NCBI RefSeq assembly: GCF_902652985.1
Contig: NC_047019.1
Span: 24,552,001-24,616,000, forward strand
Source of the DNA: Pecten maximus
Taxonomy: Eukaryota
DNA: 64,000 bases
Reading direction: 5' to 3'
The notes below the pieces were generated by a model. That model did not search any database. It was not told the DNA's origin and saw nothing but the letters and a program-made list of their open reading frames with translations. Of the stretch, positions 1 to 20,280 are shown in pieces (position 1 is the stretch's first letter; each line of letters opens with the position of its first letter). The position numbers were made by a program, and so were the translations under genes.

Positions 1-3000
1 TTACTTCATATCTTTAACTGCTGGTATACATTATGTGATGTAAAGACTGTTAATCCGTACTGGACACATTTAACCCTTTATGTAGATACCGTTGAGGTGA
101 TTTTTTTTCTCTTGCTTCTAGTTACGTGAATCCTGATATATGGTCCTCTGGTTATTTTTGTGTATCTACTCCACAGCTAAGATATAGATTGATTGCTTCT
201 GCAGTGATTTTTTTTCTAAATACATTTAATGCCTTTTCGATATTAGTAACACCATTGTGTTCTTTCCCATAATCAAATAAACTATGCCTAATGATTTTAA
301 TTCAATATTAATAGTTCCAGTGCAATCAATAATCCATTTCTTACTTTATTACTCACTTAAGATTCGTTTAATTATTCTAACATTTATCTCACTTGTCGCA
401 TGTATTTACCAAGCTCTTTTACAACTTCTGTTATATCAATTTATCTATATACATTTTGATGCGTGACATCCTAGGAGCTCCGCTAATGCGAAATTATGTG
501 TAATGCATAATTGATGGAATTCTTCAAAATGCAGTTAAGTAAATGTCATTTATTTTACTCTGAAATGGATTATAGGATGATCGGCTGCTTACGGAAAATG
601 TTTGTTTGATCATTAACGATATAAGTTATATATAAGTACATGGTTAGATGTGTCTAGGATATCGCACGACATATACAGAAGTAGTCGGTACTCAACATTC
701 CACCATGGTCACGATTCGGGTAAATAATTAGTCATCCTGAACGTACTTTAGTACTTTCTATTTTTATTACCTCGTGATGTATTTAAGATAATTTCAATAT
801 TTATGTTACAATTAGGGTTCATTGTGGACAAACACAAATGGACGGACTTAGTGCGGTTCTAGGCATGACGATTGTCACTGACGGAGGAGCGGTTGTTTGT
901 ACAATTGTTGTTACTTAGAAACTGCGGAATGAAACTAATTCTATGTTCCAATTAACACGGCGATATTAATATCTTATTTCAGACAGTGGTATAATCGGCA
1001 AGTATGTGTTCATTGTAGCATGATACCACCAACTCATTCTGATTGAAACAAAGGAAAGTCTTTAAAAACAGATAAAATAGCTACCAATAATATCGTATAT
1101 CATTGGGACGTTATACTGATTCAAATCGCGTCACCTCCGATAAAACATGGGCATCGTTTTCCCTTTTTACTCCAAATAATATATTTACATATCCTCCTTT
1201 CTTACGTTATAGGACGTTACCAGGTCTAGTATTTTAAAGATATAATTGGTCATGGTGAAGATTTCAGCATGAAAACTGACTTATATTATAGTTCCGATTA
1301 AACATAGTTTTTATCATGTAGAATGCCCCCTCTATTAATTCAAACATTATGAATGATGTTTCATCTTAAAATCAGAAGAATTATCTATTATTCCACAAAC
1401 CAAATAAACCTTCACCAAGTACATGCAAGAAAGAAATGCCATCAAGACATATTACTGTCTATTTAATACATTATAAACGGTTCCCATACCAAATTGACTA
1501 CAACGTAAATAGACTGCACACATGTCGATGCTGATGGCGTAAGATGAAGGAAACTGATAGAACCAAGTATGGGACTGAACGGACTGTTTTTACGACACCA
1601 CTGCCAACACTTTGGTTAAGATGAAATAATTTATAGCACATATCAATTACAACAAAACGTGATTCTAAATGAATACATGTGATGCCTTATTAGCCTGGTT
1701 TGCGCTGACACGTACACTACGCTAACTTTACTACACTCTTCCGGAAGTAAACGATACCGGGAATGATAGTGATACATAGAGCACCATCTGCCAAGGATTG
1801 GCCTAGAGATGGATGCCAACCATACGGCCATAATTCAAAGATGTTACGTCGAAATACGAAGGCAGTAAATTAAATCCCTTTGGGAGAGAGACTGATATTG
1901 TTTCGTATATCTTAAGTGCTATCTTTTGTTTGCGGAATACACATGCTATTTACGAGAGCATTTATGGAAGTTTCGTGATCATATGCTCATTTTAACTGCC
2001 ATCGACTTCATAGCTATTGGTGTGAAGAAAATATTTTCCAAATCTCCTCATTCCATCGTCTAACCCTAAAGTTGTCCTACGGTCTCGTTGTTTGGGATGG
2101 GACCAATAACCCATTATTTGTTTTATAACGTTAAATGACTGACAAGCGATATATTCATTTACAGCACATTGAAACCCTTCACAAATGACATTCTAATATC
2201 ATATAACATTATACTTTTTTCCAAAAAAAGATATGTATTATTACATATACTGTCGTCATTATTTTGGCATGTTGTTATGTACTGCCATATAAAGACAACC
2301 TTATTCAATGAAGCTCGGCCTGTAACGATCTGTAGGGATCCGACTCTGGAACCAAATGCTGCTTTCCTGACACTAGATTGTCTTGAAGACGAAAGTGTGG
2401 CAAAGGTTAGCAAATGACCAGGATTATGTAATTTACAGTTGGATATTGCGATTGCTTTCGATCTCACACACCTACTACTGGACAGTGTATCCCTTGAAAC
2501 ACTATTCAGACACTTTATCGATAGTAACGTCCTAATCAAAGATTCTCTTTTAGCTCAAACTCCAAAACATCTATCATGTCTACCAATGTATTGTAATTTT
2601 GATTGCATAATGTTACCAATCAATTAAAAGTTTTAATCGGACCCATCCATTCTTTAACTTGAAATTATTTCGGGATTGCTAGAAGTCAGGAACATAACGA
2701 TGCGTGTGATTCCACGACATGTGGGTTTGAATACATTTACGATGTTTGTAACTTTTCGTATTGTGATAATGTACGGTTTTGTCGTTCATTGTTTGTAAAT
2801 GCATACCCTACGCTGTCTTATTTAAATCTTCATCGCTTCTCCAACCATTCAGTGGTTAGAAATCAGCCAGCCTGTCACTGATGTTGGGAATAACACACAC
2901 GTCTTTTGCCCTACCTGGTAACACTTGGCGAACATTACATTCTTGTTGAGCAGACGCCCGCTGTCGGCTTTGATAGCGTCATTTAAATAATTAGTTGACG

Positions 3001-3640
3001 TAGGTTTAAACAGACAATTGGGACTAATTGGGGGAAAATATGTTCTTTGAAATAGTTCGGGAGAGTGATGCTTTTTCCAGCCTTGTTTTAAGCCTTGTTA
3101 TGTTCCTGTTGGGTATAGGACCAATTCATGGTTGGTTTTACATTATGAAAACTATTGTGTGATAATTTGCCTATAGGACTTGTTGTTCAAAATTAACTGT
3201 AGGCATAAGATATAAAGGTCGTCGAATATGGCAATATGTATAGGATCTTAAAGCACGTTGGGTGTTTATGCGTCTGTCTCTATATAGTCACAATGCTTAT
3301 TCACGCGGAATCACGTGCGCGCGGCGAGAGCTTAAACCCCATTAGTATAACAACGGAACCATTTTACTTTACATATGTGATATCAAAGCAACTAGAAAAT
3401 TAATGGAGAATGCAAAACAGAGTTGACTTATTCCATTTGTTCCCGTCTGATTCTAAAGAAATGCAAATTCGTTCCCATTTTTTATTAATCTATTTTAAAC
3501 ACGCCACAGTTCATACAGGGCGAATGCATGTAATGTAGATTTGTTGCGCAGTGTATCTAGATATCATTTCTTTTACATTCTGTGTTGTAAATTTGTACTG
3601 ATTTTGGTTTATGTATAGGAAGAAGTTTCTATATACTTAC

Positions 3641-3682
3641 CTCCTAAGCACGCGTGAATAGACCATCTCCCTCGGCATTTCC
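3641..3682 (-). CDS. GGNG/GGNamide (excitatory peptide, EP/CCHamide family) neuropeptide precursor, 42-nt coding exon carrying the mature peptide core
   Basis: Minus strand reads ttttatgttcacag|GG AAA TGC CGA GGG AGA TGG TCT ATT CAC GCG TGC TTA GGA G|gtaagt: canonical acceptor and donor, phase 1/1. It translates (G)KCRGRWSIHACLG(G), matching the molluscan/annelid EP motif KCxGxWxIHxCxGGN-amide (e.g. Thais excitatory peptide KCSGKWAIHACWGGNa). Confidence 0.93.
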
Positions 3683-5313
3683 CTGTGAACATAAAACATA
3701 GATAGTATTACAAAATCATACCCAATTAGTTAATAATTATGGTCATTGAAACAAACAAAAAATGTCCTAGAAAAAAGAAAACTCAATAAAATCTTGAATA
3801 AAATGTTTACCAGGAAAAGAACACTAAACACTTCCACAATGAGTAAGACTTAGTAATTGATCAGATGTATTATTATGTAATCAGTGAGTACTTATACAAG
3901 TCAGGGACATGTGTGTAAGAAGTATGTTGATAATACATTAGGCTGTTCAGTAACAGGTCAAATGTAAAGGAGATCAACTGATTAGTAACATGAATCACGT
4001 AAAAATAACTAGGTCGAATTAGCTCTGAAAAATAAAATATCAAAATAAGTATACAAGCAAACGTCGGCAATGTAAACGTCTATTAAGTTTTTTTTGTATT
4101 TAATGCAAAATAACGCTAAAATTCACGGACGTGAGTGTTCTGTTGAAAATGATGATTCACTCCACTTAATATGACATTCAGAAAACGGCGCAGTACATAA
4201 TATAGTGTAAATTACAAAAGCTAATTAGACTGCGTTATACAAAATGTTTCGGAAAAACCAAACAAACAGAAAACATGTTGTCATTTGAAGACATGCAATT
4301 CTATACTAAATTAAAGTTGTTTTTACGAAATAAAGTTAGGCATGATGATTTTGATATGAGATTGGAATGCTCTCTTGCTTGGAATCTAAAAGTATCTGTC
4401 TGCTCAAGGAGTAATTTAATTCATTTTTACAATTGTAACATGTTGTCTCTCCTACATTTTCTATATCAGCCATCGGTAACTTTACATGATCAGTAATGAC
4501 TGCTAACAAAGTTGTCATTATTCTGATGTTCTCAAACACGCGGCTAAATTTGATGTAATCTAACTGTTGGAACATAAGACATATCTAATGTGATAACATT
4601 CACGTTTCTACAAACTTCACGAGAGATGGAAGTACCTGATATAGAACAATGCTGCCTCTAGATTATATCATACCCTGTCTACATCCACTTTATGGGGCCT
4701 TGAATTGATTGTTAGTACTCGATAGAACCAGACCAAAAGAGACATCAACGCCAGGTGTATCATTTTAGAAGAGTCATATCTGATCACAATGTTTCAAACA
4801 GAAATATATAATGACACAATATATTCTTTCGCTAACTCATAGTACTCACAATAGCATCCGTACTAAAATATAAAAAGAGATTGCTTATTCATCACCTTGA
4901 CCTACTTTCTATGTTATCTAGCTCTGTCATTGTCTTTGAATTTATCAATACAGAAATGAATCAAACATATTAATGATTTGATAATCTAACTGATGAACTA
5001 TGAAGTGAATGTATTTATATAAAGTCACAATATACATACTAGATAGAAGACAATACCTTTAATCGTACTTAAGATACAATACATCATCTAGCTGGACTAT
5101 AAAAGGAGAAAACACATTTAAAATATTATAATGGGCACACGCGCAATACAACCGGGTGGCGCTCTTATATCTTAATAATTAAGTAGGTTTTAGATACCTA
5201 CTATAATGAAAAACCGAGAAGGGAGAGAGAGGGGGGGCTTAAGGACATGGTCAAATCGAAAACTACGAATAACTATATCAGCAACAAAGCATGGGAACTG
5301 TAATACTAGGAAC

Positions 5314-5817
5314 TACTCAACCAAAAAACAACCTACAACAGAGTATGAGGACAGTATCACTGTGATATACTTCACCAAAAACCAACCTACAACAGAGTAT
5401 GAGGACAGTATCACTGTGATATACTTCACCAAAAACCAACCTACAACAGAGTATGAGGACAGGATCACTGTGATATACTTCACCAAAAACCAACCTACAA
5501 CGGAGTATGAGGACAGTATTACTTCGAAATACTTCACCAAAAGTCTACCTACAACAGAGTTTGAGGACAGTATTACTGCGAAATACTTCACCAAAAATCT
5601 ACCTACAACAGAGTATGAGGACAGTATTACTGCGATATACTTTACCAGAAATCTCACTAAAGCAGAGTACATGTATGAAGACAGAATTATTGCGATATAC
5701 TCAAAAAGATCTACCTACAACATAGAATTAGTACTATAATAATATGATGTACTCCACTTAAAATCGATCTACAACAGAGTATGAGGACTGTAATACTACT
5801 ATATACTCCACCAAAAA
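5314..5817. repeat. 54-bp minisatellite, about 9 copies, intronic
   Basis: Unit ctacaacagagtatgaggacagtatcactgtgatatacttcaccaaaaaccaac, decaying toward the right. It explains ORFs 5206-5739, 5313-5672 and 5507-5725. Confidence 0.95.
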
Positions 5818-8800
5818 TGTATTAGTGTTATTATTGTTATTATTTGTTTTAGTTGCCAAACCGTATCTCATTGAGAATACTTTTCACAGATAAATTTCAA
5901 TGAACACAAATCCATGATTTTAAGAAACTGTATGACTTGCTTAGTATGATTGGAGAATGCGCTGACAATCGTGTACATCGTACAAGTTAAAGCATAGCCG
6001 TTGAAAGTGATCGGTGGGATGTTTTCATAAAAATAGCTATTTATCAAATCAACGGTAAGTTCAAAGCACCGATAAACAAAAGTGGCCCTCACAAGTAAAC
6101 GTAGTTTAGACATGTCAAAGGTTTGATATCAGTTTGTGAAAAAATAAGAAGTAAAATGTGCTAGATCCAAACGCCTCATTGAATGAAGATAGTATTCCCT
6201 AGGTATTTTTGCTGGAACCGTCAGCACGTAAATGATATCTACGAATAGCCTGAAAACCCTAGACAGAATTCATTCAATCTACGGTTGTGGTTTGTAATCT
6301 CTTACAATTCTAAATACAGTTTCTGAGGTCTTTCTCCTGATGTCTGATCGACACAGCTCCAATTTTACCGAAAGCTTATCTAGTGAACATATTTTTGATC
6401 AATTCTCAATCGAAATAGACAAATATCATCATGAATGCAATTTCTGGCATCCGGAAAAAATCATTGATCTGAGCCCCATACACGTTTGCACCGGTTGATG
6501 TGCTTGAGATGCAGCTGAAACAGAACGGTGATCTAGATCAGATAGAAGAAATAGACATATCGGTTTACCATGTAGAACAGTAATGTCTAATATAGAAGAA
6601 TGGTCACTCATTATTAAATAAGGAAAACAAAGAAATATATATCAGCAGATTTTAATATAGATACATGTATGTAGACTAGGAAAATAATCACTTTCGTGAT
6701 AATTTAGTTCCTGGATTTCTCCCAGGGTGGAATTGGCATACCAAGTGTCAATCATTGTATCGTACTGATCTAAAAGCTATTAGGCGCCGTAGACAGTGAG
6801 TTCGGGGCCCGGTCAGGGCACAACTCATAAAATTGTCATCCTTTTTTGTGTTACTATGCCATATATCTAACAATTAGAAGAGTGTATCATATGCACTATG
6901 TGTTGTTGATTCGAATGTTACATATTTGGATTTTTTGTCGTAATTGCATTTTGTTGATTATACGCCCAGTTATAAGAAAAGACAACTTTAATTGATGCCA
7001 TAATTATAGTAAAAAAACCACATTGCAGTAGTGTTTAAAATTATAAAAATGTATGTCACTGTTATCATATTAACTGGAAAATATCTTATTTATTTATAAC
7101 GAAAATACTCAACTATATGGCTCTAGTTCATCAATGAAGCCATACTATATATTTTACGTATTTTAGCAGCGTTATACATGTACATGGTTGATAATTTTTT
7201 CATACAAAATCATTATGGAAGCGAAAAATACTTTCCAGTCTCTATCGATAGGGGTTTCTATTTCCAATTCATCTCTACTCTGTTTATACCAAATTATCAC
7301 TATGTGTTAAATATCCGATGGATAAACTATCAAAGAGCTAGCTTTGGTATCAACAGGTTACATTGATGGTATACTAGATACTTGAAACTGTAGGGGATGT
7401 CCTTTATTAATTTCAACTGCCAACAAGACAATGTAACAAAGGTTATTTGATGCACTAGCAACGCAAAGCATAAACTGTAAAACACAAAAGAACAGCTAAT
7501 GTCAGTACGTCGGTTTTGGACAGATTTAACAGCTTATTTCTAGCCTAGGTGGCGACATGTAACACAATGGTTGATCCTTTGAGATATCTTAATCTCTTTT
7601 AATCATTCCATATACGCAATGCCATGCACTTTGGAAGCATACAGACACAAAAGAAAAATGTGGTTATGAATATATTTTGAACATTTGCTTACATTTTGTT
7701 CCCTCAGCTTAATTCTGACTTTGTAATGGCCTCCCTGGGAATCATGGGCAAGTCTTTTTTCAATATTTGTAATTTAATCCAAATAAATGCAGTATAATTA
7801 TACATAATATCTTTGATGTTTTCCCTCTTTTTTTCTGGCTTCATTCTTGCAATAAACTCATATGTCCTAGATGGATATTACCGCACATCATTTTTTCATC
7901 TTTGATTTGTCATCTGTAGATATTACAGATATGAAAATTGCATAACTTCATTTCAACAACGCAAATATATCGTTAACAAATAACTGTAACATTCCACAAA
8001 TCAAAGGGTCAGGACGGGGCAGGAGAACACTAATCATTCTCCCCCATCGTGGACGAGATAGGTGAATCCCAGCCCTAAAGGGTCTTAAGTTGACAAAAAA
8101 AAAAAAAAAAAAAAAATCATGCCTCGTGTTGGTAACTGCAGAATCTCCCCCTCCGGAAATTTTCTAAATTATCCACGAGTGAGTGATTTGAAGATTGTAT
8201 TATACATGTAATACTGAATGAATAGAACGTTTTTTACAAACAATACTATAAAGTTATCTTTTCCAGAGATATAGAGAGCTTGCATGTGCTGTGTACTCTT
8301 GTTCAATGTTCCGTAATCCATATCATCCTAGTATATTTATTAACTTGAACAGTCTATGGAACAACGGTTTTGTTTCTGTATTTCAGAGTTGTCTGATCTC
8401 ATGCCTTTTTAACATTAATTGGTTCCGTGTATTGCACGATCAAAACCCTTTTTTGAAAAGAACTGACCATCTTCTTTGATAAAATGATGCTTGTGAATGG
8501 TAATAGTTTGAGTACAGATGCCGATAAGACGCTGTTGACAACGCCAATGCCGAGATGGTCTCTCATCGAAAGCCTATTTCAACTGTGTTCGAATTCGTAG
8601 ACAATTGTTAGGTCTGACCCCAGATGCCATTTATTACCTTAAGTGAGACGTGCATGCTTGTGATATAGAGGAAGCAGACAAGACGACAACGCGAGCCTCA
8701 GGCGAATCCTATGTATATGTCATTAGTATCTTAAATGGACGTTCTAAGCTAGGACCTATCCTTTTATACACATATTTGTTCAGTGTGATGCTAAACTTAA

Positions 8801-9439
8801 TAAGTATTCAATAAGTTGATGTCAAGTTATTGAGCCTCAAGACCACTCCGTTTTTCTTTGCCTATGGCACGACTTCCTCAAAGAACTACTGTTGATAGTG
8901 TAATAGCAAACTGACTCGTGGTGAGAAAATCCGAATGTGTAGTTTATACGAGTTAGGAGCAGGATAGATCAATATGTTATATCTAATTCCTCAGATTTGT
9001 ATAGAGGAAAGGCATTGTTTCTTACCCTGACCTTCAATGACAGCGATACGGTAAAGAAGAAATAATATTTAAATAATTAAATGAAATGGTTTAAACGATA
9101 TTTATAGATGACATAATAAGCTGAGGTGTTCTGTTAAAGATATCAAGGGGACGTTCATATTGTATCCTTATATTTGATATGATGCTTTGTAAGAAGGAAA
9201 ATACAACGCAAATTAACTTTTAACATGAATATTTACCTAGATTAAGGACACCTTTACCACTATAATATGTCTTTAAACTTTGAACTTCAAATATGGTTGA
9301 TAGTATGATGAAAGGGCCGCGTGATGGATACATTCTAAGATGCAAGGTCGCATGGGATATTTTCAAATAAATCTAATAGCTTTTATCCTTCAATGCATCC
9401 TGATCACGTCGGCGGTAAAACATCACGAAGACCTGGAAT

Positions 9440-9885
9440 TTTAATAGCGGAAAACGGGAGAATTTCTTACCAGACAAAGCACAGTAAATCTACTTTAACT
9501 TGATATTTTGTGTCTATTTTTATATAAAGGAAACTGGCGTTGATTTTCTTGGTCTTTTGTAATGAAATTGTATTTCCTGAGAAGAGTAGAACGAAGATAA
9601 GGTGTAATGGAGACAGACATTCGTCTGTAGTTAGTGGGAGGTTTTTTACTTAAGGAGAGTCGACGCTGTGTCGCAATTCAGTCTCCTGATGTTTTTTGTC
9701 ATTGAAGGTAAATGTCCGAAACGCATTATTAGACTTGCCATAATGTTTTGCCCATTATAATGGCAGAGAGAAGAAAGGCCATACATTTGCAATGGCAGGC
9801 CTGTATGATAAGCGTGATGTTAAAAAATATGATACTGGATAAATTAGTATCTAAGCAACCCCATACATTGTGCGAATTGCTTAGA
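9440..9885 (+). mobile_element. Possible highly decayed Penelope-like GIY-YIG endonuclease relic
   Basis: tat ata aag gaa act ggc = YIKETG (cf. YIGETG), with downstream LMFFVIE and DKLVSKQP-like fragments in the expected order. Many stops and frameshifts. Confidence 0.3.
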
Positions 9886-11769
9886 AACCGTTGGATAAGT
9901 ATATGATTTAAATAGTCAACATGTCGTTATAAAATTGACCCATATTAGTATATGTACCTTTGTTTTTTGTGTTATCATATATTTGTAATTGTTGTATCTT
10001 CTCGGTGATATATCTGATATATAGTAGTGTGTTGATTTAGTTGTATATGACTTTCATTCATATTATTCATATATGATAATCTCCAGAATAACTAAAATTC
10101 AGTTACTGACAGCTTATGGTTAAAGTCGAACCTACCTCCTCAGCTCTTAATACTTATAACCAGTAATACCCCTTTCCTATACAAACCACTTACCATACAG
10201 TGATTTACAGGTTATATTGAAACCATGAGTCATTTAGCACTGTAACGTTTTAGAACGCTGAACAGGTGAGCGTTAATGCATGTAAGGAAATCATATCCAT
10301 ATCAGCAATTGATGGGTGGAGTGCAATATCACTTCTAAACCAGCGGGTAACAACTATTGGCAAAAAGATGCTGCTGAAATCAGCAGGACACTCATATAAA
10401 TGGATGCAATATCTCAAAGGCTTACATTATCACTGACCAAATTATGTTTTGATGTCAGTTTTTCATAATAACGCGAATTGACTAGTGGTCTTAACAATGA
10501 TACCACCTATCTCACAATAGTTTACCTTTTAATCTAACCTGAAACAAACATTATTCAATGACAAATGTGAGGCGATTTACGATAACTTAAACACTAATCT
10601 ATTTTTTAGCAACCGTCCACAGTCTAATCCCGAGCTTTGTTAATGTTTGCTATAGACTACGGTTTTGGTACGAGTGCTATGGGATCGGGCAGTATGGACG
10701 ATACAATTCATTAGAACCAAGTAGTGACTATGTGAGGTACCTTATATGCGTCTTTCTAGCTTACTACTGAATGGTGTTGATTTCCCTATTCAAGGATAAT
10801 ATGCTCCTGTTTTGAGCAAGCGCATAAGAATGATATGATTTTATCGGATGTATTCAGAGCTAACATGCCTGATAAGCTTATTTATAAAGCCAACTAAGTG
10901 TTTGTATTTGATGCAAATGGTACCCGTCTTTCCCCCGACCAACAATGTACTCGTAAGGGGATCGATACTAGTAGTTGTCGCATTTGATTTGTATTTCGTA
11001 TCGATCTGTTCGTAAATATTTGATGGATAAACATCAGTACAATACCCATGTTCTATATGTACCTGTTATTTACTCCTAGAATCAGGAGAAGCACGGGAAG
11101 CTAAAATCCTCATGTGGAAGTATAGACCTCTTTGCTATATGTTAGCTTCACAAAATCCTCACAAAATTCTCATAGTGCATATCAAAAGCAATGTCCACTT
11201 ACATTTCTATCACTGTAATTTTCAGTTAGAAATCACACAACATCAGACACTCTTTGTTCTTTTGTTGTGTGACATTTTCCAATAAGATAGTTATGTCGTT
11301 GTTTCTTTTAGCTTGATAGCAGTCATGTGGATGTGCGTATCAATACTATCAGCATGTGACAGGATAATAACTCGAGCTCCCCTAGGTAGCGCAGTGGTGG
11401 GACAATCTAATCCAACGTCCAATTATATAACCAGTAATATTGCTTTATGAAAAAACATATTTGCACACCAAATCTGATTAATGAAACATTAATAAGACAT
11501 TGATAATATATATGTCATGTGTAGCAATTAATGACTAATTATTTCTGATATCTTATATTAGTCCATCCCAATTTACTAGAGTAAAATAGGCATTTCTTAT
11601 AAGTGTGCATTACTAAGATATCAGAGTAATTATGATTAAGCATCACCCTTTAATGGTGGTTTTCATTTCATTTCTCATTTATTCTTCCTTGTCAAATACT
11701 CACTTTTATTTTCAGTAATCAAACTATGGATTATGTTGTAGTATTTTTTTACCGATTATAGCCAAACGC

Positions 11770-13110
11770 CTACCAGTAGCTGGATATGAAATCAATTCTG
11801 GAGTGACTGAATATTATATCAATAAAAATGACTACAACAGCTCTCGGTTACTGAATACAATAAAAGTCAACTACTGACTAACACAGCTTTCAGATGTTGA
11901 ATACAATATCTGTGAAAATGTGGTTAAACTAGCTCCTAGTTACTGACTTCATTATAGAGCAACTTACGGCAACAACATCATCCTCGATTAACTATATAAT
12001 AGGGAACAACCAACCAATTGAAAAAATATATTTTTCAAACATCCCTTGTGTATAGAAAGTTGAGCCAGGGATAAAATGTCTGGCAGCCACTGATTGGCCA
12101 GTATGTTATGAAGTAAGAAAATAGATATGTGGCCTGATAGGTAACTGTCCATAAGAAATGTTGATATAAAGTCCGATTGAATTTTTTCCCAAAAGTTCAG
12201 GTCATAATAATTAATAGGTAAACATCTCAGATTTTTGAGAATTTTTACTGCGAAATTCACTCATTTTCAAAATGGCAACGCTGACAAAAAATTGGACTGA
12301 AGGACCCAACTTTCTTTTTTTCATTACGTGTTATACGAGACCGTAACCTTTTGTTATAAACCATAATTGCCAAATTGAATTCAAGAATTTTAATGATATA
12401 CTCTAAAACGTTAGCACTAAAGTCTATGGAGAAACAATTGGTTGGTTGGTCCCTAATACAGCCATCCATTTCAGAATATAACATCTGCCAGTAACTATCT
12501 ACAAGAGAGATCAGTTACTGAACATAACAAATGTCAGTGACTATCTACAACAGCCACCAGTCATTTGATACAACGAATACCAATGTATATCTAAAATATA
12601 ACTATCTACAACAGCTGTCAAACACAGAATATAACATCTGCCAAAAATTACAACCATTAGTTACTGAATATAACATCTGCATATATATATATATATATAT
12701 ACAATGTAACTACCACAGCCGTTAATTACTGAATATAACTTTTGGCAGTAACTATCTACAACAACCATCATTTACAACATCTGCAAGTATAACATCTGCA
12801 AGTAGCTATCTACAACAGCCGTCAGTTACCGAATATAACATATGTCAATAACTATCTAAAACAACCATCATTTACGTAATATAACATCTGCCAACAAGTA
12901 TCTACAACAACCATCAGTTTCTGAATATAGCATTTGCCAATCACTATCTGCAGCAACCAACAGTTACTAAACATCAGTCAGTAACTATTTACAACAGTCG
13001 TCAATTACTGAATATAACATCTGCCAATAATGAATGTAATCTGTCAGTAATTATCTACAACAGCCATCATTTACTGAATAAAGCACCTACCAATGACTAG
13101 CTGCAGATTT
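11770..13110. repeat. Degenerate ~46-bp minisatellite interrupted by a MITE
   Basis: Unit approximately cagttactgaatataacatctgccagtaactatctacaacagccat. Clear at 12458-13110, decayed copies at 11770-12000. Confidence 0.85.
12001..12454. mobile_element. 454-bp MITE, probably PIF/Harbinger-related (3-bp AAT TSD)
   Basis: 20-bp TIRs agggaacaaccaaccaattg / caattggttggttggtccct (1 mismatch), with aat on both sides. Removing the element restores a repeat unit of normal length. Confidence 0.85.
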
Positions 13111-15709
13111 ATCTGAATATCACAGGTTTTTCTCAGTAATACGATTGAGAACAAAAGTCAACCGAACGAAACCTCCACTGCAAAGAAGGCTATTCTAATA
13201 AGATTGTCTTTCATTGAACAGATTTTCTTGATATCGTAAAACACAATACATTTGCTATATTGAAAATCTTACAGGGTCTCTATATTGTCAGCAAAAGTTA
13301 CGAAAATAAGGTAGATCTGTCATGGAATGAAGGTTCCATTGCAATTTTTTTCACCTTTTCCTAGCCTCAATGTTTTTCTTTTTTTTTTTTTTTGCTTATT
13401 GCTTAGTCTTCAGGAGTATGACTGAGTGCTTATCTCTGTTTACATTGGACTCAAATGAACTTGTGTCGCTTAAATAAAACATTCGTAAAACAGATAGGCA
13501 ATAATACACAACGTTATGGTTGAATTCCAGTTCAGTACAAACCAATAAAGAAAACATACTAATAGTAATAGGTGAGAATGTATATACTGTACACTATCCT
13601 ATCACTGATGATACACACATGGAAAGCAGAAACAGCGCTATATATACTCCTGGGGAATTAATATTTTAAATAACATATAGCTATCACTTCTATTTGATAT
13701 GTATTTGTATAACAATATGTGTAACGGGAATGAAACAGATCAGACGCACTCGAATGTTTCGCAGTAATGACAATAAATGGTGAGCTGTAATCTGGTTGTT
13801 GTAGCTACCCTGTAAGATCATATACGATCAACATACAACTGTACATGAACATGATTATCTAATTAGCCCAACACTAACATATTGGATATATGAGTACAAA
13901 GTGACGTGTATATCAGATTCTAATTATACTGATTATACTGTATATTAAGTGGCATGCAATAACCTCTAGCTAGTGATAAACATGGCGTCATTAACGTGAA
14001 TCAGCAAATCAGGTATTTCAGTACAATAGAATTATCTTAAAACAATGAGGTACATTTCGACATCTGAGTTTGGTAATATCGTCAAAAGATGGTGATATTT
14101 ACGTATTTGAAGATAAGTACGATTGTCCCGATTTGTTGATTTCACATTACAATGACCAGAAACTCGCATACCTAGTTATACAGGTGATATACAGGTTTCA
14201 TATAAAGCGTTGATACTGCTAAATTGAGCATTTAGGTGCGTATTTGCTTCTGTGATATATCACAACATACATGTCTTGTAAATACCAACCTATTAGATAC
14301 GTCCAGTGAAATGCTATACATCAATCATAGATATGAATATACTGATATATAGTGCATACAAACTAATCTTATCTAAACATATATCTATCTACATCTCTAC
14401 GCATTTATTCTAGCAGATTCATACCTCTCCAGCCTGAAAAAATAAACAATATAAAACATCTGTTAATAGGATATTCCTTTATATTTTATTGTGACGATTA
14501 TCGTGATGATAAGGCTTTTATCAGCTAGAAACAAAATAATTTATTTAGAGGCATTGACAAAGTTTCTTGTGTCGGGTAATACATAAATAATATTGACGTA
14601 GTATATACATTAAGATATGCAAATGAGATGTCGTCATAACATCCGAACGGCTAACGTCATACGTCCAGACAGTGCTGTGATAAGGACTAGACATACGATA
14701 CTGTTTAGGAGTAATTAGTTCTTACTGTATAACATTATGTAAATATATTCATGACGTTTTTCGAAACTTTGTAATTGCATACTATTGTATATCATAAGAA
14801 ATAAAAAAAAAGTTAAATAATATATTGTACATCACTTTACACCATCACTGATCGGAGGAGATGTAAGAACATTAATTAGATACCGGGGATTTATATTGCT
14901 TTTTGCTCAGTTAGAAATCTAAATGACAGTATGATGATTCGTATAGCTTTTCACAGAAAAATAGCACCATTCACAAATTATCGATTTCTTTTTACCTAAT
15001 TCAAAGATAAAACTGATCCTTGTATTGTGATCGTAGCATATCACTATCCAGTGTACCCGACTCTATGTCTTAAATGGCATTTACTTTAAGCCCTATAGAT
15101 GCCTGATCAAACCGGGAGAAATCAATTTCACTCGACTGCAAATACCATGATCTCTCTCCGGAAGCCAAGCGAAACATTTACATCAAATTGGCTATTTTAT
15201 AAATCATGATCATGTCCAGGCTTATTCTACCGAATACTCAATTTTGCTTTATATGATGTTAAGCTTACCGTCACTTGATGGAGATTGCTATTCTGATGTT
15301 CTGTGTTTAATGCGTCAATGAACGCTACATTCATACTGTTATAGCGGTGTTATAGGTCTCTATACCCGGGTGTTATAGAAGGTACATACGACGACAAAAT
15401 AGCCATCGTAGAAGTTTTAGTTTACTATCTATGGTGGAGTTTTCACGTATAACATTGTCTTAGCCATTACAAAACTTTGTATGTATATTTATATGTAAAA
15501 GACATTGAGCTTAGTTTAGGCTGTCTAGGTCATTTATGGTATGTTTAACTTGCTTCCATAGCCTTCATTGAATATAAAATTGCACTGTTGTTACATATTC
15601 GAAACATCAGTTCGACGCTTTTGTATGAGCGTTTGAGATGAAATTTGGGAGTGACATCTAGTTATTTCGAATAAATAGCAATTCCATGTAACAGTTTACA
15701 ACACGACAT

Positions 15710-15895
15710 GGTACTCGAAGAAAAACTGGAGTCAATTAAATAGTCTCCCAAAGGAACGGTGTTCTCCATGTTCAATTTTCCCTATAAAAGCATCTTACGA
15801 TCTGGATGATAATGAATTTGATATTTCTATTCAGGATTGTACATCTTTAGCTGACAACATTAAATGATCTCTTCTATAATAGAATATTGCTTTTT
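15710..15895 (+). mobile_element. Possible decayed LINE ORF2 C-terminal Cys/His relic
   Basis: Fragments resembling ETG..LPKER.C..C...D.NEF...C across frameshifts. Confidence 0.25.
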
Positions 15896-16930
15896 TAGTG
15901 AACTAACGGGTGTACAGAAGTGTTTCAAATGTTTTGCCCGGTTGCTATTTTGTGTTTACATTGCTGTATAACGGAATAGTAACGATTAAGCGCCTATAGA
16001 ATATGAAACAATATGTCTTTAAACATTTAGTTTTTAATAACATCTAGTATACAATAAAACTCTTAACTACACAGCCTTAAATGAATAAATACTAGCTTCA
16101 GTAATAGTCTTATGCAATCCATTCCTACACATTTTGTTGCAACACATCAGTTCAAACTATTTAATCGTGATCCCAGACTAAAATAACCTCATCGAATCAT
16201 CATCGTTTGTTAAAGGTGTGAAAAGTGGCATGATTATTCTGAAATGTTATAGATTACAATGTATGGGTCTCCCTAATAAAACTTTCCATTACCAATCGAC
16301 ATTGAAATAAACCAATGCGGCATTTTACTTTAAACAATCATGAAGTGGACGGTATGGATCGTTATCAAACTTGAATGTTAGAATTTAGAATATATCATAT
16401 GAGAATAAACTTGGCTTGACTATGTGGGTTTTCATTGATTATCTTATCAGTGGACAAGGCCATATTGATAATATAAAACGCTTAATGGTATGTCTTTATG
16501 ATTTTACTTATGAAAATCAGAAAGCTGTAAATTTTCATATCGAATGTATGCTTTTCGGCATAAATGAACCTATATCACGGCATTGTATTACAATATATTA
16601 TGTAGTAAAATTACTTATATATCATAATTAAACAACGAATTAATTTTGAAATAACATTTAGGTATATCCTGACATAACAATCTTCAATTTTCTATATTTC
16701 AACAGCCTTCCTTTTTATGTAAACCAAGAATATCAATGTACTAGATATGATATTTAACACTTTATATATTCTGTATGCATACCGGATATTTCTCTACAAA
16801 ACTTTTTCTCCGATAAGGTATAAAAATCCACTTAGCTTACAGATAAAACCAATAGAATATTTCAAAATGATATCGGAATTCATAAAAAATTTACAAATCA
16901 TTCATAATCATAATTACATATGTGACTTAC

Positions 16931-17009
16931 CTGCTGATACAGATGATATATTTACGGATAGGTATACACAACATGTCGCAGCGAATAACCAGATACACCT
17001 GTGGTTCAT
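16931..17009 (-). CDS. GGNG/GGNamide precursor, signal-peptide exon (first coding exon)
   Basis: aaagATG...TCA GCA G|gtaagt, 79 nt (26 codons + 1). It encodes MNHRCIWLFAATCCVYLSVNISSVSA: basic N-region, hydrophobic core and V-S-A (-3,-1) cleavage site, placed immediately before the peptide as is typical of EP/CCHamide precursors. Confidence 0.88.
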
Positions 17010-17126
17010 CTTTAGCTGTCTCAAAGTTCCAAAGTAACGGGCAAACAAGTGTGCAAGAACTCCAACCAAGCCTACTAAGCCTTTAGATATGTACAGTTAG
17101 ACGGCCTTGTATAGGTGTGCTATCTG

Positions 17127-17193
17127 GGAACGAGTCTTGTATTGCCAAACGGTACTCGTTCCTCTTTGGTGTGAAACTTTTTAAATCACCAAT
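17127..17193 (-). promoter_or_regulatory. Candidate core promoter/5' UTR start of the neuropeptide gene
   Basis: Minus-strand TATA-like GATTTAAAAAG (17187-17177) about 29 nt upstream of a GAGTA and about 170 nt upstream of the ATG. A 9-bp inverted repeat ggaacgagt/actcgttcc spans 17127-17162. Weak: an upstream non-coding exon is equally possible. Confidence 0.25.
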
Positions 17194-18029
17194 ATTTGTA
17201 TGGAGTGTTTCTAGTTAACTACTATCGCGTGTCGGTTCAGAATGTGTAGTTTTTAGTGCTTACCGCCCCCGTGAACGGCATACATTGACACTACCTAGGC
17301 CGGTATAGGGATGGTCAGGAATCATGGATCGGTTTATCAGACTGAGCAAAGAGACAAGGTATTGGATATTGGCTTGCTAGGGGGGAGGCCTTGCTGAACA
17401 AACACGCACGGTTTCTCTATTATTGATTGCTAATAGATGTATAGTAATTCACTACAACTATTACATCAGCTCACAATAAAACATTCTCGCCCCCTTTATG
17501 CATTTTTGTACCAAGAGAGGCGATATAGAAATCTAGTAAGGGGTCAAGGGATTTGTCATAGTACTTTTATTCGTCATCACTTCATGGTTGTTGTGCATTT
17601 TGACATTTTTGAAAACAAACTAAACAAACAGTTTCACCACCATCGATGTGTATTTGATGATCTTTCAAAAATATCAAACGGTGTTGGTTTGGAAGCGTAA
17701 ATAAGCGAATCATCAAAAATGTTAAAGTCTGTTAGAGTTGACATGTAATTTCTATATCGTACCGGAGTTAATTTTAACACAACTTTCAATTATGCAGTTT
17801 TGAATTAGTCTATTGTTTCAAAAATTATAAAGGAAAACAGTCATTGCCATCAATGTAAACCAAATACTTATTAAAATCGTATAATGAATACTGTACAGCA
17901 ATACACTTGTCCTTCTTCTTTCAATGTTTCCTACATATTTGTTGATATTATCTTTATGATTAATACTGGCGTTAACACACCATATAGCTATTGTGCAGTT
18001 TGATACAATCACGTTGATCTACTGAACAT

Positions 18030-20280
18030 TTTGACACGGCCAAGTGTTATGTATTGTACACTTTGATACGGTCACGTGCTACGCTTGTAACTACCGTGCA
18101 ACTTAACACGTTCATGTGTTATCAACTGTACAGTGCGTTACGATCATGTGTTACGTACCGTTCATTTCGATACAGTCACCTGTTATGTTATACATTATGA
18201 TATGGTCACATATTATCTGCTGTATATTGTGATACGGTCACGTGGTATCTGTTATACAGTGGATACGGCCACGTGCTATCTGTTGTACATTGAGATACGG
18301 TCACATATTATTTGTTGTACATAGTGATATGGTCAAGTGTTATCTGCTGTAAAAAAGCAAATGCAGCATTTTGGGAGTGGGACGACTGGTTGGTCCGTTG
18401 TCAGTACAACGCGACCGGATGGGGTGTCCTGCAGTATGCTTCAGTGGGGTAGCACTATACATCTGTAAAAGTTAACGTTCCGGCCTATCACAAGGAGACT
18501 TAACACGAAATACCGCAGCCCCCACAAACACATATACGCACTAACCACACGCATGCATATCGCAAACACGAAAGGCCGTCCTTAAATTACCATAGCTGTT
18601 AATAGGACGTCAAACAAATGAAACCAAACCAAACCAAGCATTAAACAGTCACGTATTATCTGCTGTTCAGTGTGACACGGTCACGTGTTATCAACGATAC
18701 AACGTGATACAGTCACGTGTTACCTACTGTACAGTATGATACAGTCACGTGTTATCTACTGTACAGGGTGATACAGTCACGTGTTATCTACTGTACAGTA
18801 TGATACGGTTACGTGTTATCTACTGTACAGTGCGATACAGTCACGTGTTATCTACTGTACAGTGTGATACAGTCACGTGTTATCTACTGTACAGTATGAT
18901 ACGGTCACGTGTTATCTACTGTACAGTGTGATATAGTCACGTGTTATCTACTGTACAGTGTGGTACAGTCACGTGTTATCTACTGTACAGTGTGATACGG
19001 TCACGTGTTATCTACTGTATAGTATGATACAGTCACGTGTTATCTACTGTACAGTGTGATACGGTCATGTGTTATCTACTGTACAGTGTGATACGGTCAC
19101 GTGTTATCTACTGTACAGTGTGATACGGTCACGTGTTACAGTGTGATACGGTCACGTGTTATCTACTGTACAGTGTGATACGGTCACGTGTTATCTACTG
19201 TACAGTGTGATACGGTCACGTGTTATCTACTGTTCAGTGTGATACAGTCACGTGTAACCTACTGCACAGTGTGATACAGTCACGTGTTATCTACTGTACA
19301 GTGTGATACAGTCACGTGTTATCTACTGTACAGTGTGATACAGTCACGTGTTATATACTGTACAGTGTGATACAGTCACGTGTTATCTACTGTACAGTGT
19401 GATACAGTCACGTGTTATCTATTGTACAGTGTGATACAGTCACGTATTATCTACTGTACAGTGTGATACAGTCACGTGTTATCTACTGTATAGTGTGATA
19501 CAGTCACGTGTTATCTACTGTACAGTGTGATACAGTCACGTGTTATCTACTGTACAGTGTGTTACAGTCACGTGTTATCTACTGTACAGTGTGATACAGT
19601 CATATGTTATCTACTGTATAGTGTGATACAGTCACGTGTTATCTACTGTACAGTGGGATACAGTCACGTGTTATCTATTGTACAGTGTGATACAGTCACG
19701 TATTATCTACTGTACAGTGTGATACTGTCACATGTTATCTACTGTATAGTGTGATACAGTCACGTGTTATCTACTGTACAGTGTAATACAGTCATGTGTT
19801 ATCTACTGTACAGTGTGATACAGTCACGTGTTATCTACTTACAGTGTGATACAGTCATGAGCTACACTTGTAACTACCGTACAACTTCACACGCTTACGT
19901 GTAACCTACTGTGTTACATACAATATTGTACTGGTCATTTCGATACGGTCGAATGTTATATATTGTGATATGGTCACATATTATCTGCTGTATAGTGTAA
20001 TACAGTCACGTGCTATCTAATATAGAGGTTGATACTGTTATGGGCTGTATACTGTACAGCGTGATATGATCACGTGTTACATGCTGTACAGTTGATACGG
20101 TCTGCTGTATATTGTGATATGATCACATGTTATCTGTTGTACAGTAGATACGGTCACATGTTATCCGCTGTATATTGTGATATCATCACGTGTTATATGC
20201 TGCAATGTGTGATACGATCACGTGTTATCTTCTCTACAGTGTCACATGTCAACTTGTATCCATCATGTTTAACTTCACAC
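18030..20280. repeat. 32-bp satellite rich in CACGTG; homogeneous core 18645-19858 (about 38 units) with degenerate flanks
   Basis: Unit gtgatacagtcacgtgttatctactgtacagt, containing the palindromes CACGTG and ACTGTACAGT. Confidence 0.97.
18361..18637 (+). mobile_element. 5'-truncated MetaSINE-type SINE inserted in the satellite flank
   Basis: gcagcatt..gggagt..gactggttggtcc..tcagta.aa.g.gacc resembles the Meta domain. 3' tail gtccttaaattaccatagctgttaataggacgt followed by (aaacc)n. Confidence 0.75.

What the first reader, a model, noticed from the sequence alone, without database searches (positions are those of the whole stretch)
3641..17009. Hidden GGNG/EP (CCHamide-family) neuropeptide gene, invisible to the ORF track
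Seen: two tiny minus-strand exons (79 and 42 nt) with canonical gtaagt donors and matching phase splice across 13.2 kb to MNHRCIWLFAATCCVYLSVNISSVSA|GKCRGRWSIHACLGG. Established: molluscan and annelid excitatory peptides have the form KCxGxWxIHxCxGGN(amide), carry one disulfide, follow the signal peptide directly, are myoactive on gut and reproductive tissue, and are orthologous to arthropod CCHamide. Inference: the mature peptide is cyclic GKCRGRWSIHACLGGN-amide. I found no exon beginning GN AAY GGN AAR in 1-3640, so the rest of the gene should be in the adjacent window.
Basis: partly seen in the sequence, partly recalled or inferred. Interest (0 to 1): 0.85.

Follow-up and report, generated by a model that had tools for sequence, protein, structure and literature searches.

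The report
Scallop GGNamide (excitatory peptide) gene
This is the king scallop's gene for the GGNamide/excitatory-peptide (CCHamide-type) neuropeptide, split into tiny exons over about 39 kb; it is real and transcribed, but the same peptide was published for a sister scallop in 2018 and RefSeq already holds the gene model, named only 'uncharacterized protein'.

Summary
Exon 1 (window 17009-16931, minus strand) and the 42-nt exon 2 (3682-3641) are as described. The predicted third exon lies 8.9 kb further on, just outside the window. It starts GT AAC GGT AAA AGG, which encodes (G)NGKR. Transcript contigs from three studies stop exactly at the exon 1 donor and continue with exon 2 sequence.

The genome is Pecten maximus. 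The locus is RefSeq LOC117327615, 'uncharacterized protein', with isoforms of 140 and 143 aa. The Yesso scallop ortholog was published as GGNamide (Zhang 2018) with the identical mature peptide, GKCRGRWSIHACLGGNamide. A whole-library HMMER search found 42 representative homologs, and all family-invariant residues are present. So this is a known neuropeptide gene and not a hidden one. Amidation, the disulfide and the receptor are inferred, not shown.

One extra finding is a 9-nt alternative microexon (window 14433-14425, GCTGGAGAG) that inserts Gly-Trp-Arg before the peptide. Its sequence and splice sites are invariant in four scallop genera, and one P. maximus transcript contig includes it. 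I found no paper that describes it.

The parts
17010..17273 (-). 5' UTR of exon 1. Transcript evidence is contiguous with the genome up to at least 17273. The true transcription start is not determined.
   Evidence: table 8: the contig pieces run 16930-17273 (X5), 16930-17160 (X1) and 16930-17072 (X13). About 480-500 nt upstream of the ATG is 84-87% identical in three other scallop genera.
16931..17009 (-). Coding part of exon 1: start codon, 26-residue signal peptide MNHRCIWLFAATCCVYLSVNISSVSA, and the first base of the next Gly codon. Donor gtaagt, phase 1.
   Evidence: equals residues 1-26 of RefSeq XP_033740561.1/P0004; all transcript contigs leave the genome exactly here.
14434..16930 (-). 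Intron 1a (2,497 nt), between exon 1 and the microexon. It holds one conserved non-coding island (about 15259-14932).
   Evidence: zero contig depth over 13810-16886 in all four runs; the island is collinear in L007, L008 and L009.
14425..14433 (-). Alternative 9-nt microexon GCTGGAGAG (phase 1 to phase 1). It inserts Gly-Trp-Arg between the signal-peptide cleavage site and GKC..., giving RefSeq isoform X1 (143 aa).
   Evidence: unique match in the window, 0 expected by chance; flanked by ttttttcag and gtatga; the microexon and both splice sites are invariant in Argopecten, Mizuhopecten and Ylistrum; the X13 contig reads exon 1, then GCTGGAGAG, then exon 2.
3683..14424 (-). Intron 1b (10,742 nt). 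It contains tandem repeats and four further conserved non-coding islands.
3641..3682 (-). Exon 2 (42 nt), encoding (G)KCRGRWSIHACLG(G). This is the core of the mature peptide, with both cysteines.
   Evidence: 13 codons, of which 6 are invariant, 7 vary only synonymously and 0 change an amino acid across four genera; loose ends of X5, X1 and X13 read into this exon.
1..3640 (-). Window part of intron 2 (8,928 nt in all). The rest of the gene lies below window position 1. Exon 3 is L003 4712-4462 (C5:24546712-24546462, 251 nt). Exon 4 starts at L005 9354 (C5:24531354), with its stop codon at L005 9306-9304 and a 3' UTR of about 1.4-1.5 kb.

Best explanation
The interval holds the 5' half of the single-copy Pecten maximus gene for the GGNamide / excitatory-peptide (EP, CCHamide-type) neuropeptide precursor, RefSeq LOC117327615.

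Shown here: the gene runs on the minus strand over about 39 kb. It has four constitutive exons: exon 1 (5' UTR plus signal peptide), exon 2 (42 nt), exon 3 (251 nt) and exon 4 (16 codons plus about 1.4-1.5 kb of 3' UTR). A 9-nt alternative microexon sits in intron 1. The gene is transcribed and spliced in both forms.

Inferred from the sequence and from what is established for this family:
- Signal peptidase cuts after Ala26.
- A prohormone convertase cuts after the Lys-Arg that follows GGNG, and a carboxypeptidase trims the two basic residues.
- Peptidylglycine alpha-amidating monooxygenase converts the terminal Gly into an amide.
- The two cysteines form a disulfide.
- The product is cyclic GKCRGRWSIHACLGGN-NH2, or GWRGKCRGRWSIHACLGGN-NH2 when the microexon is included.
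- By analogy with annelid, nemertean and Aplysia EP, the peptide acts on a class A GPCR of the EP/CCHamide type as a brain-gut, myo-excitatory or feeding-related signal.
For: Exons and splice signals were read directly. Exon 3 starts with (G)NGKR and exon 4 was located. Each exon equals the corresponding residues of RefSeq XP_033740561.1 and XP_033740560.1, which lie on a contig of 51,398,101 bp, the same length as this window's contig.

Transcript contigs from three studies end at 16930/16931. They continue with exon 2 in X5 and X1, and with the microexon followed by exon 2 in X13. Intron 1a has no coverage.

Two Argopecten irradians transcript contigs map to their genome in the same four blocks. 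Intron positions are the same in Mactra, Solemya and Dreissena. Only one locus was found in the genome.

There are 42 HMMER hits at E<=0.001 (best 1.7e-82), with C29, G31, C38, N42, G43, K44 and R45 invariant. The ortholog was published as GGNamide with the identical predicted peptide (PMC5996578). The family features and the receptor pharmacology come from PMC6617912 and PMC12969411.
Against: Nothing contradicts the gene identity. Several steps are not shown here.
- No peptide-level evidence exists for scallops. 'GGNamide' does not occur in the mass-spectrometry table among the supplements held for Zhang 2018.
- Amidation is not universal in the family: the purified earthworm peptides keep the C-terminal Gly (PMC12969411).
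- No receptor was searched for in this genome.
- SignalP was not available.
- The run records do not say that the runs are RNA; this is inferred from the spliced contigs and the empty intron.
- Contigs cannot give isoform ratios or tissue of expression.
Confidence: 0.95

Rival explanations
1. The main bioactive product is the N-terminally extended peptide GWRGKCRGRWSIHACLGGN-amide, made from the microexon-containing mRNA (isoform X1), and not the 16-residue peptide the reader proposed. Alternatively, both are made and differ in function.
For: The X13 contig that contains the microexon is the only form assembled in that run, and it has the highest word depth (1263.8) of the runs laid. The microexon and its splice sites are invariant in four genera. 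RefSeq lists X1 in three species. N-terminal splice variants of EP exist in the nemertean Lineus longissimus.
Against: X5 and X1 hold only the form without the microexon. Both Argopecten transcript contigs and the M. yessoensis ganglion cDNA also lack it. Contig depth is not a measure of expression. In Lineus both variants activate the single receptor with similar EC50 (78 and 59 nM), so a functional difference is not expected by default.
Confidence: 0.3
2. The peptide is released with a free C-terminal glycine (...GGNG), as in earthworms, and is not amidated.
For: The purified Eisenia and Pheretima GGNG peptides are non-amidated although their precursors are similar (PMC12969411).
Against: G-K-R after the Asn is the canonical amidation signal and is invariant in all 44 aligned sequences. 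The molluscan peptides characterised so far (Thais, Aplysia) are amidated.
Confidence: 0.08
3. The two mini-exons are a chance resemblance or a dead remnant, not a working gene.
For: None beyond the small size of the exons (79 and 42 nt).
Against: Spliced transcripts are found in several studies. Substitutions in exon 2 across four genera are synonymous only. The reading frame is intact through four exons and equals the RefSeq models. Intron positions are conserved across bivalves.
Confidence: 0.01

Closest known systems
GGNamide precursor of the Yesso scallop Mizuhopecten (Patinopecten) yessoensis (MH045222 / AXN93490.1; Zhang et al. 2018, PMC5996578)
   Same: It is the ortholog. It is 140 aa long and sits in the same 90%-identity cluster as the P. 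maximus proteins. It has the same four coding exons and the same microexon and the identical predicted mature peptide GKCRGRWSIHACLGGNamide. It was also missed by that genome's original annotation (blank gene ID).
   Different: It comes from a different genus. There are a few substitutions in the signal peptide and the C-terminal propeptide. The paper reports only the form without the microexon.
Lophotrochozoan excitatory peptides / GGNG peptides (earthworm, leech, Perinereis, Thais TEP-1/2, Aplysia apEP/CCHa)
   Same: A single peptide copy follows the signal peptide directly. Two Cys are separated by 8 residues, with Trp and His between them. Gly-Gly-Asn-Gly-Lys-Arg lies at the C-terminal side.
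   Different: The scallop peptide has Ser where most homologs in the alignment have Ala (W-S-I-H, consensus W-A-I-H) and Leu before GGN. Its activity, disulfide and amidation are untested in scallops, whereas they were shown chemically in Aplysia and Thais.
Arthropod CCHamide-1/-2
   Same: The precursor layout is the same, with two Cys and an amidated C-terminus. Orthology is established through the receptors (PMC6617912).
   Different: CCHamides end in His-amide and differ between the two cysteines. Pterygote insects have two paralogous genes and receptors, while only one locus was found in this scallop genome.
[quoted passage not shown] 2019, PMC6617912)
   Same: [quoted passage not shown] This is the same kind of variation as the scallop GWR microexon.
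   Different: The nemertean genomic basis is not described in the text read, so a microexon is not known there. The scallop insert is exactly 9 nt and was found only in pectinids among the bivalves examined.

Membership tests
EP / GGNG / CCHamide neuropeptide precursors | [quoted passage not shown] | tested here: met
   Exon 1 encodes a basic n-region, a 15-residue hydrophobic core and VSA at -3 to -1. The peptide starts at the next residue in isoform X2. In isoform X1 three residues (GWR) are added. SignalP itself was not run.
EP / GGNG / CCHamide neuropeptide precursors | Two conserved cysteines, with an aromatic residue and usually a His between them | tested here: met
   C29 and C38 are invariant, and W33 and H36 are nearly invariant, in the 44-sequence alignment. 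All four are present in the scallop protein.
EP / GGNG / CCHamide neuropeptide precursors | Gly-Gly (or Gly-Ala) between the second Cys and the C-terminus, followed by Gly plus a dibasic site (amidation and cleavage signal) | tested here: met
   The sequence is C-L-G-G-N-G-K-R-S. N42, G43, K44 and R45 are invariant, and G40, G41 and S46 nearly invariant. Exon 3 was read directly.
EP / GGNG / CCHamide neuropeptide precursors | Significant sequence similarity to recognised family members | tested here: met
   phmmer against 1.84 billion representatives gave 42 hits at E<=0.001. The P. maximus proteins share a 90%-identity cluster with the protein that UniProt names GGNamide, A0A346GAT7. No Pfam model exists for the family.
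EP / GGNG / CCHamide neuropeptide precursors | Conserved gene structure among bivalve orthologs: a phase-1 intron after the signal peptide, a phase-1 intron inside the second Gly codon of GGN, and a short last coding exon. This is a supporting feature observed here, not a published definition. | tested here: met
   The same four coding blocks occur in Argopecten, Mizuhopecten, Ylistrum, Mactra, Solemya and Dreissena.
EP / GGNG / CCHamide neuropeptide precursors | The mature peptide carries an intramolecular disulfide and a C-terminal amide | not testable with these tools
   This needs peptidomics. It has been shown for Aplysia but not for scallops: no GGNamide entry occurs in the mass-spectrometry table held.
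EP / GGNG / CCHamide neuropeptide precursors | The peptide activates an EP/CCHamide-type class A GPCR (the feature that defines orthology with CCHamide) | not tested
   No receptor sequence was available by reference to search this genome. Receptors are deorphanised in Platynereis, Lineus and Aplysia.

The most novel reading that the evidence does not exclude
The 9-nt microexon (GCTGGAGAG) is invariant with its splice sites in four pectinid genera and was not found at the equivalent place in Mactra, Solemya or Dreissena. It could be a regulated switch that lets one gene make two ligands, GKC...GGN-amide and GWR-GKC...GGN-amide, with different receptor preference (molluscs have two EP/CCHamide receptor types), stability or tissue of release. 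That would be the splicing equivalent of the insect CCHamide-1/-2 gene duplication.
Probability: 0.2. Interest if true: 0.5.

Novelty: already known. Interest (0 to 1): 0.2.

Why it matters
The practical gain is a name. LOC117327615 of Pecten maximus, and the equally unnamed orthologs in Ylistrum, Argopecten, Dreissena, Mactra, Solemya, Potamilus, Sinanodonta, Biomphalaria and Liolophura, can be labelled as GGNamide/EP precursors. Their current labels are 'uncharacterized' or 'hypothetical protein'. The family has no Pfam model, and its peptide lies on a 42-nt exon, so ORF-based and domain-based annotation cannot see it.

Biologically the gene is the expected scallop member of a well-studied brain-gut peptide family. 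The only element that could lead to new work is the conserved GWR microexon, which offers a simple natural pair of ligands for receptor pharmacology in a commercially important bivalve.

Tried and rejected
- Exon 3 inside the window: GN AAY GGN AAR / MGN patterns gave only chance-level hits, and none lies on the minus strand below 3640. The exon is outside the window.
- Read-through of exon 3 past its donor: this gives a hydrophobic, low-complexity tail. It was rejected because RefSeq, the orthologs and the Argopecten transcripts splice to exon 4.
- Paralogs: a six-frame search of the whole genome with the 140-aa precursor found only this locus. Very divergent copies could be missed.
- ORFs of 110 aa or more inside the introns (2159-2539, 5206-5739, 5313-5672): no Pfam hit reached threshold, and the 5206-5739 ORF lies on a 54-nt tandem repeat. 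They are treated as spurious.
- Rfam on window 1-21000: nothing.
- Microexon outside scallops: the pattern AG|GNTGGMGNG|GT is absent from the Mactra, Solemya and Dreissena loci. A 3-aa length difference in another cluster (P0051 against P0033) turned out to be an N-terminal extension and not a microexon.
- Upstream satellite as a conserved regulatory element: it is not found within 3 kb upstream of the ATG in the other three scallops.
- Literature: no paper in the library contains the GWR-extended peptide string.
Exons were searched by reference one at a time, and the full-length comparisons used database proteins (P0003, P0004).
- Limits of the read evidence: introns 1b, 2 and 3 exceed the 6,000-letter limit of read laying. 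The exon 1-exon 2 junction therefore rests on the loose-end letters, not on a joint inside the laid stretch. The exon 2-exon 3 and exon 3-exon 4 junctions in P. maximus rest on RefSeq, on contig lengths and on the Argopecten transcripts.
Full report
**What is in the sequence**

On the minus strand an ATG at window 17009 opens 78 nt that encode MNHRCIWLFAATCCVYLSVNISSVSA. One more G follows, then the donor gtaagt, so exon 1 ends at 16931 in phase 1. At 3682-3641 a 42-nt exon sits between the acceptor ttcacag and the donor gtaagt. In the matching phase it reads (G)KCRGRWSIHACLG(G).

**The missing exon**

Pattern searches confirmed that no (G)NGKR exon lies in window 1-3640. The window is G000:C5:24552001-24616000. 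I fetched the 40 kb below it and searched the minus strand for AG|GN AAY GGN (Lys/Arg). There was exactly one hit, at L003 4712: ttctgtttccag|GT AAC GGT AAA AGG. This exon is 251 nt (L003 4712-4462). It encodes (G)NGKRSGPQ...DLVDEL and ends at a gtaagc donor in phase 0. Intron 2 is 8,928 nt.

The last coding exon (IYRKKLRSLSDEAGLV, then stop) starts at L005 9354, after an intron of 15,107 nt. Comparison with an Argopecten transcript, and a polyadenylation signal about 1.44 kb into the exon, put the 3' UTR at about 1.4-1.5 kb. The gene therefore spans about 39 kb for a 140-residue precursor.

**Whose gene it is**

The translation of exon 3 hit two proteins at 89-92% identity, from the scallops Ylistrum balloti and Argopecten irradians. 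The 90%-identity cluster of the first also contains XP_033740560.1 and XP_033740561.1, named 'uncharacterized protein LOC117327615 isoform X1/X2 [Pecten maximus]'. They lie on a contig of 51,398,101 bp, exactly the length of this window's contig. The same cluster holds AXN93490.1 / A0A346GAT7, which UniProt names GGNamide, from Mizuhopecten yessoensis.

Exon by exon, the window and its neighbouring sequence reproduce residues 1-26, 28-40, 42-124 and 125-140 of isoform X2. The split codons account for residues 27 and 41. The genome is therefore Pecten maximus, and the gene model already exists in RefSeq without a functional name.

Zhang et al. 2018 (PMC5996578) derived the Yesso scallop precursor from a ganglion transcriptome. 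In their Table S1 the gene has no ID in the original genome annotation. It is one of 14 of their 63 neuropeptide genes that the annotation missed.

**Transcription and splicing in P. maximus**

Eighteen public runs from five studies hold every sampled word of exon 3. Their records do not say that they are RNA. I laid the contigs of four runs on window 12000-17400.
- No contig covers 13810-16886, which is intron 1a.
- Contigs of 1,174 nt (X5), 1,775 nt (X1) and 1,983 nt (X13) cover exon 1 and the 5' UTR, up to 17273 at most, and leave the genome exactly at 16930/16931.
- In X5 and X1, the 30 loose letters beyond that point, reverse-complemented, read GAAATGCCGAGGGAGATGGTCTATTCACGC.
- In X13 they read CTGGAGAG followed by GGAAATGCCGAGGGAGATGGTC.

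Spliced contigs and an empty intron show that these runs contain RNA. Because read laying is limited to 6,000 letters here, the junction is read from loose ends and not from a joint inside the laid stretch. The two downstream junctions in P. maximus rest on the RefSeq models, on contig lengths and on orthologous transcripts. Two independent Argopecten irradians transcript contigs (L010, L011) map to their genome in the same four blocks.

**The microexon**

RefSeq isoform X1 (143 aa) has Gly-Trp-Arg inserted between ...SVSA and GKC. Neither an alternative donor of exon 1 nor an alternative acceptor of exon 2 can encode it. A search for AG|GNTGGMGNG|GT found one site in the window, with none expected by chance: 14433-14425, ttttttcag|GCTGGAGAG|gtatga. 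That is exactly what the X13 contig contains.

I fetched the orthologous loci of Argopecten, Mizuhopecten and Ylistrum. In all of them the nine bases, the AG and the GTATG are invariant. Much of the following ~60 nt of intron is also conserved. This island reaches the highest identity of the six collinear conserved islands in intron 1 (89% in Argopecten, 80-82% in the other two genera). The pattern is absent from the Mactra, Solemya and Dreissena genes, which otherwise share the intron positions.

No paper in the library contains the extended peptide string. Alternative splicing that changes a few N-terminal residues of EP is, however, known from the nemertean Lineus longissimus. There both peptides activate the one receptor with similar potency.

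**Family membership**

A whole-library phmmer search with the 140-aa isoform returned 42 representatives at E<=0.001. Those looked up come from bivalves, a gastropod and a chiton, and nearly all are labelled 'uncharacterized' or 'hypothetical'. In the alignment C29, G31, C38, N42, G43, K44 and R45 are invariant. K28, W33, H36, A37, G40, G41 and S46 are nearly invariant, and each sequence has a hydrophobic N-terminus ending just before K-C.

These are the features that Thiel et al. 2019 and the 2026 Aplysia study give for EP/CCHamide-type precursors. They list a single peptide directly after the signal peptide, two cysteines, an aromatic residue and His between them, Gly-Gly before the C-terminus and an amidation signal. 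Pfam has no model for the family.

Across the four scallop genera exon 2 has 7 codons with synonymous-only differences and none with an amino-acid change. Exon 3 has 14 of 83 codons with amino-acid changes. Selection is therefore concentrated on the peptide itself. Only one locus was found in the genome.

**How it most likely works**

Shown: the gene structure, its transcription, the two splice forms and family membership at the sequence level.

Inferred from established prohormone processing and from the family literature:
- cleavage after Ala26;
- convertase cleavage at Lys-Arg and carboxypeptidase trimming;
- amidation of Asn from the Gly donor;
- a Cys-Cys disulfide;
- action on an EP/CCHamide-type GPCR as a brain-gut or myo-excitatory signal.

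Not shown for any scallop: the peptide itself, its modifications, its receptor and its tissue of expression.

**Verdict**

The novelty is low. The exact model is in RefSeq and the identical peptide was published for a sister genus in 2018. The conserved 9-nt microexon is the one detail that may deserve follow-up.

Noticed in passing
window 18169-20242 (main array 18645-19857): A 32-nt satellite of about 38 copies, each carrying the E-box CACGTG. There are 38 CACGTG in the 4 kb upstream of the ATG against about 1 expected. It begins about 0.9 kb (main array about 1.4 kb) upstream of the most 5' transcript evidence (17273). It is absent from the 3 kb upstream of the ATG in Argopecten, Mizuhopecten and Ylistrum, so it is not a conserved part of this gene's control region.
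   Followed up: partly
window 15259-14932, 11057-10811, 9895-9282, 8832-8572, 6546-6161: Five collinear conserved non-coding islands in intron 1 (68-80% identity across four scallop genera), in addition to the microexon island. They may be enhancers or further rare exons. The first has no contig coverage in the four runs laid, and the others lie outside the laid stretch.
   Followed up: partly
window 17010-17510: About 480-500 nt immediately upstream of the ATG (5' UTR plus the likely core promoter) is 84-87% identical in all four scallop genera. This is much higher than the surrounding sequence.
   Followed up: partly
window 12000-12455: Many very short RNA contigs (39-81 nt) with very high word depth (up to about 13,900) pile up here inside intron 1b, on both strands and with loose ends on both sides. 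This looks like a high-copy transcribed repeat and is unrelated to the neuropeptide gene.
   Followed up: no
window 5320-5818 and 12788-13030: Intronic tandem repeats of 54 nt (9 copies) and 46 nt (5 copies). The first creates the spurious 177-aa ORF at 5206-5739.
   Followed up: yes
window 17039-17042: A one-base deletion relative to the assembly in the 5' UTR, present in all three transcript contigs (placed at 17039 in X5 and X1 and at 17042 in X13). It is either a polymorphism or an assembly slip (table 4).
   Followed up: no
P0008-P0048 and the clusters: Almost every mollusc ortholog of this neuropeptide precursor in the public databases is labelled 'uncharacterized' or 'hypothetical protein', and Pfam has no model for the family. 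A family profile built from alignment A3 would let annotation pipelines name them.
   Followed up: partly
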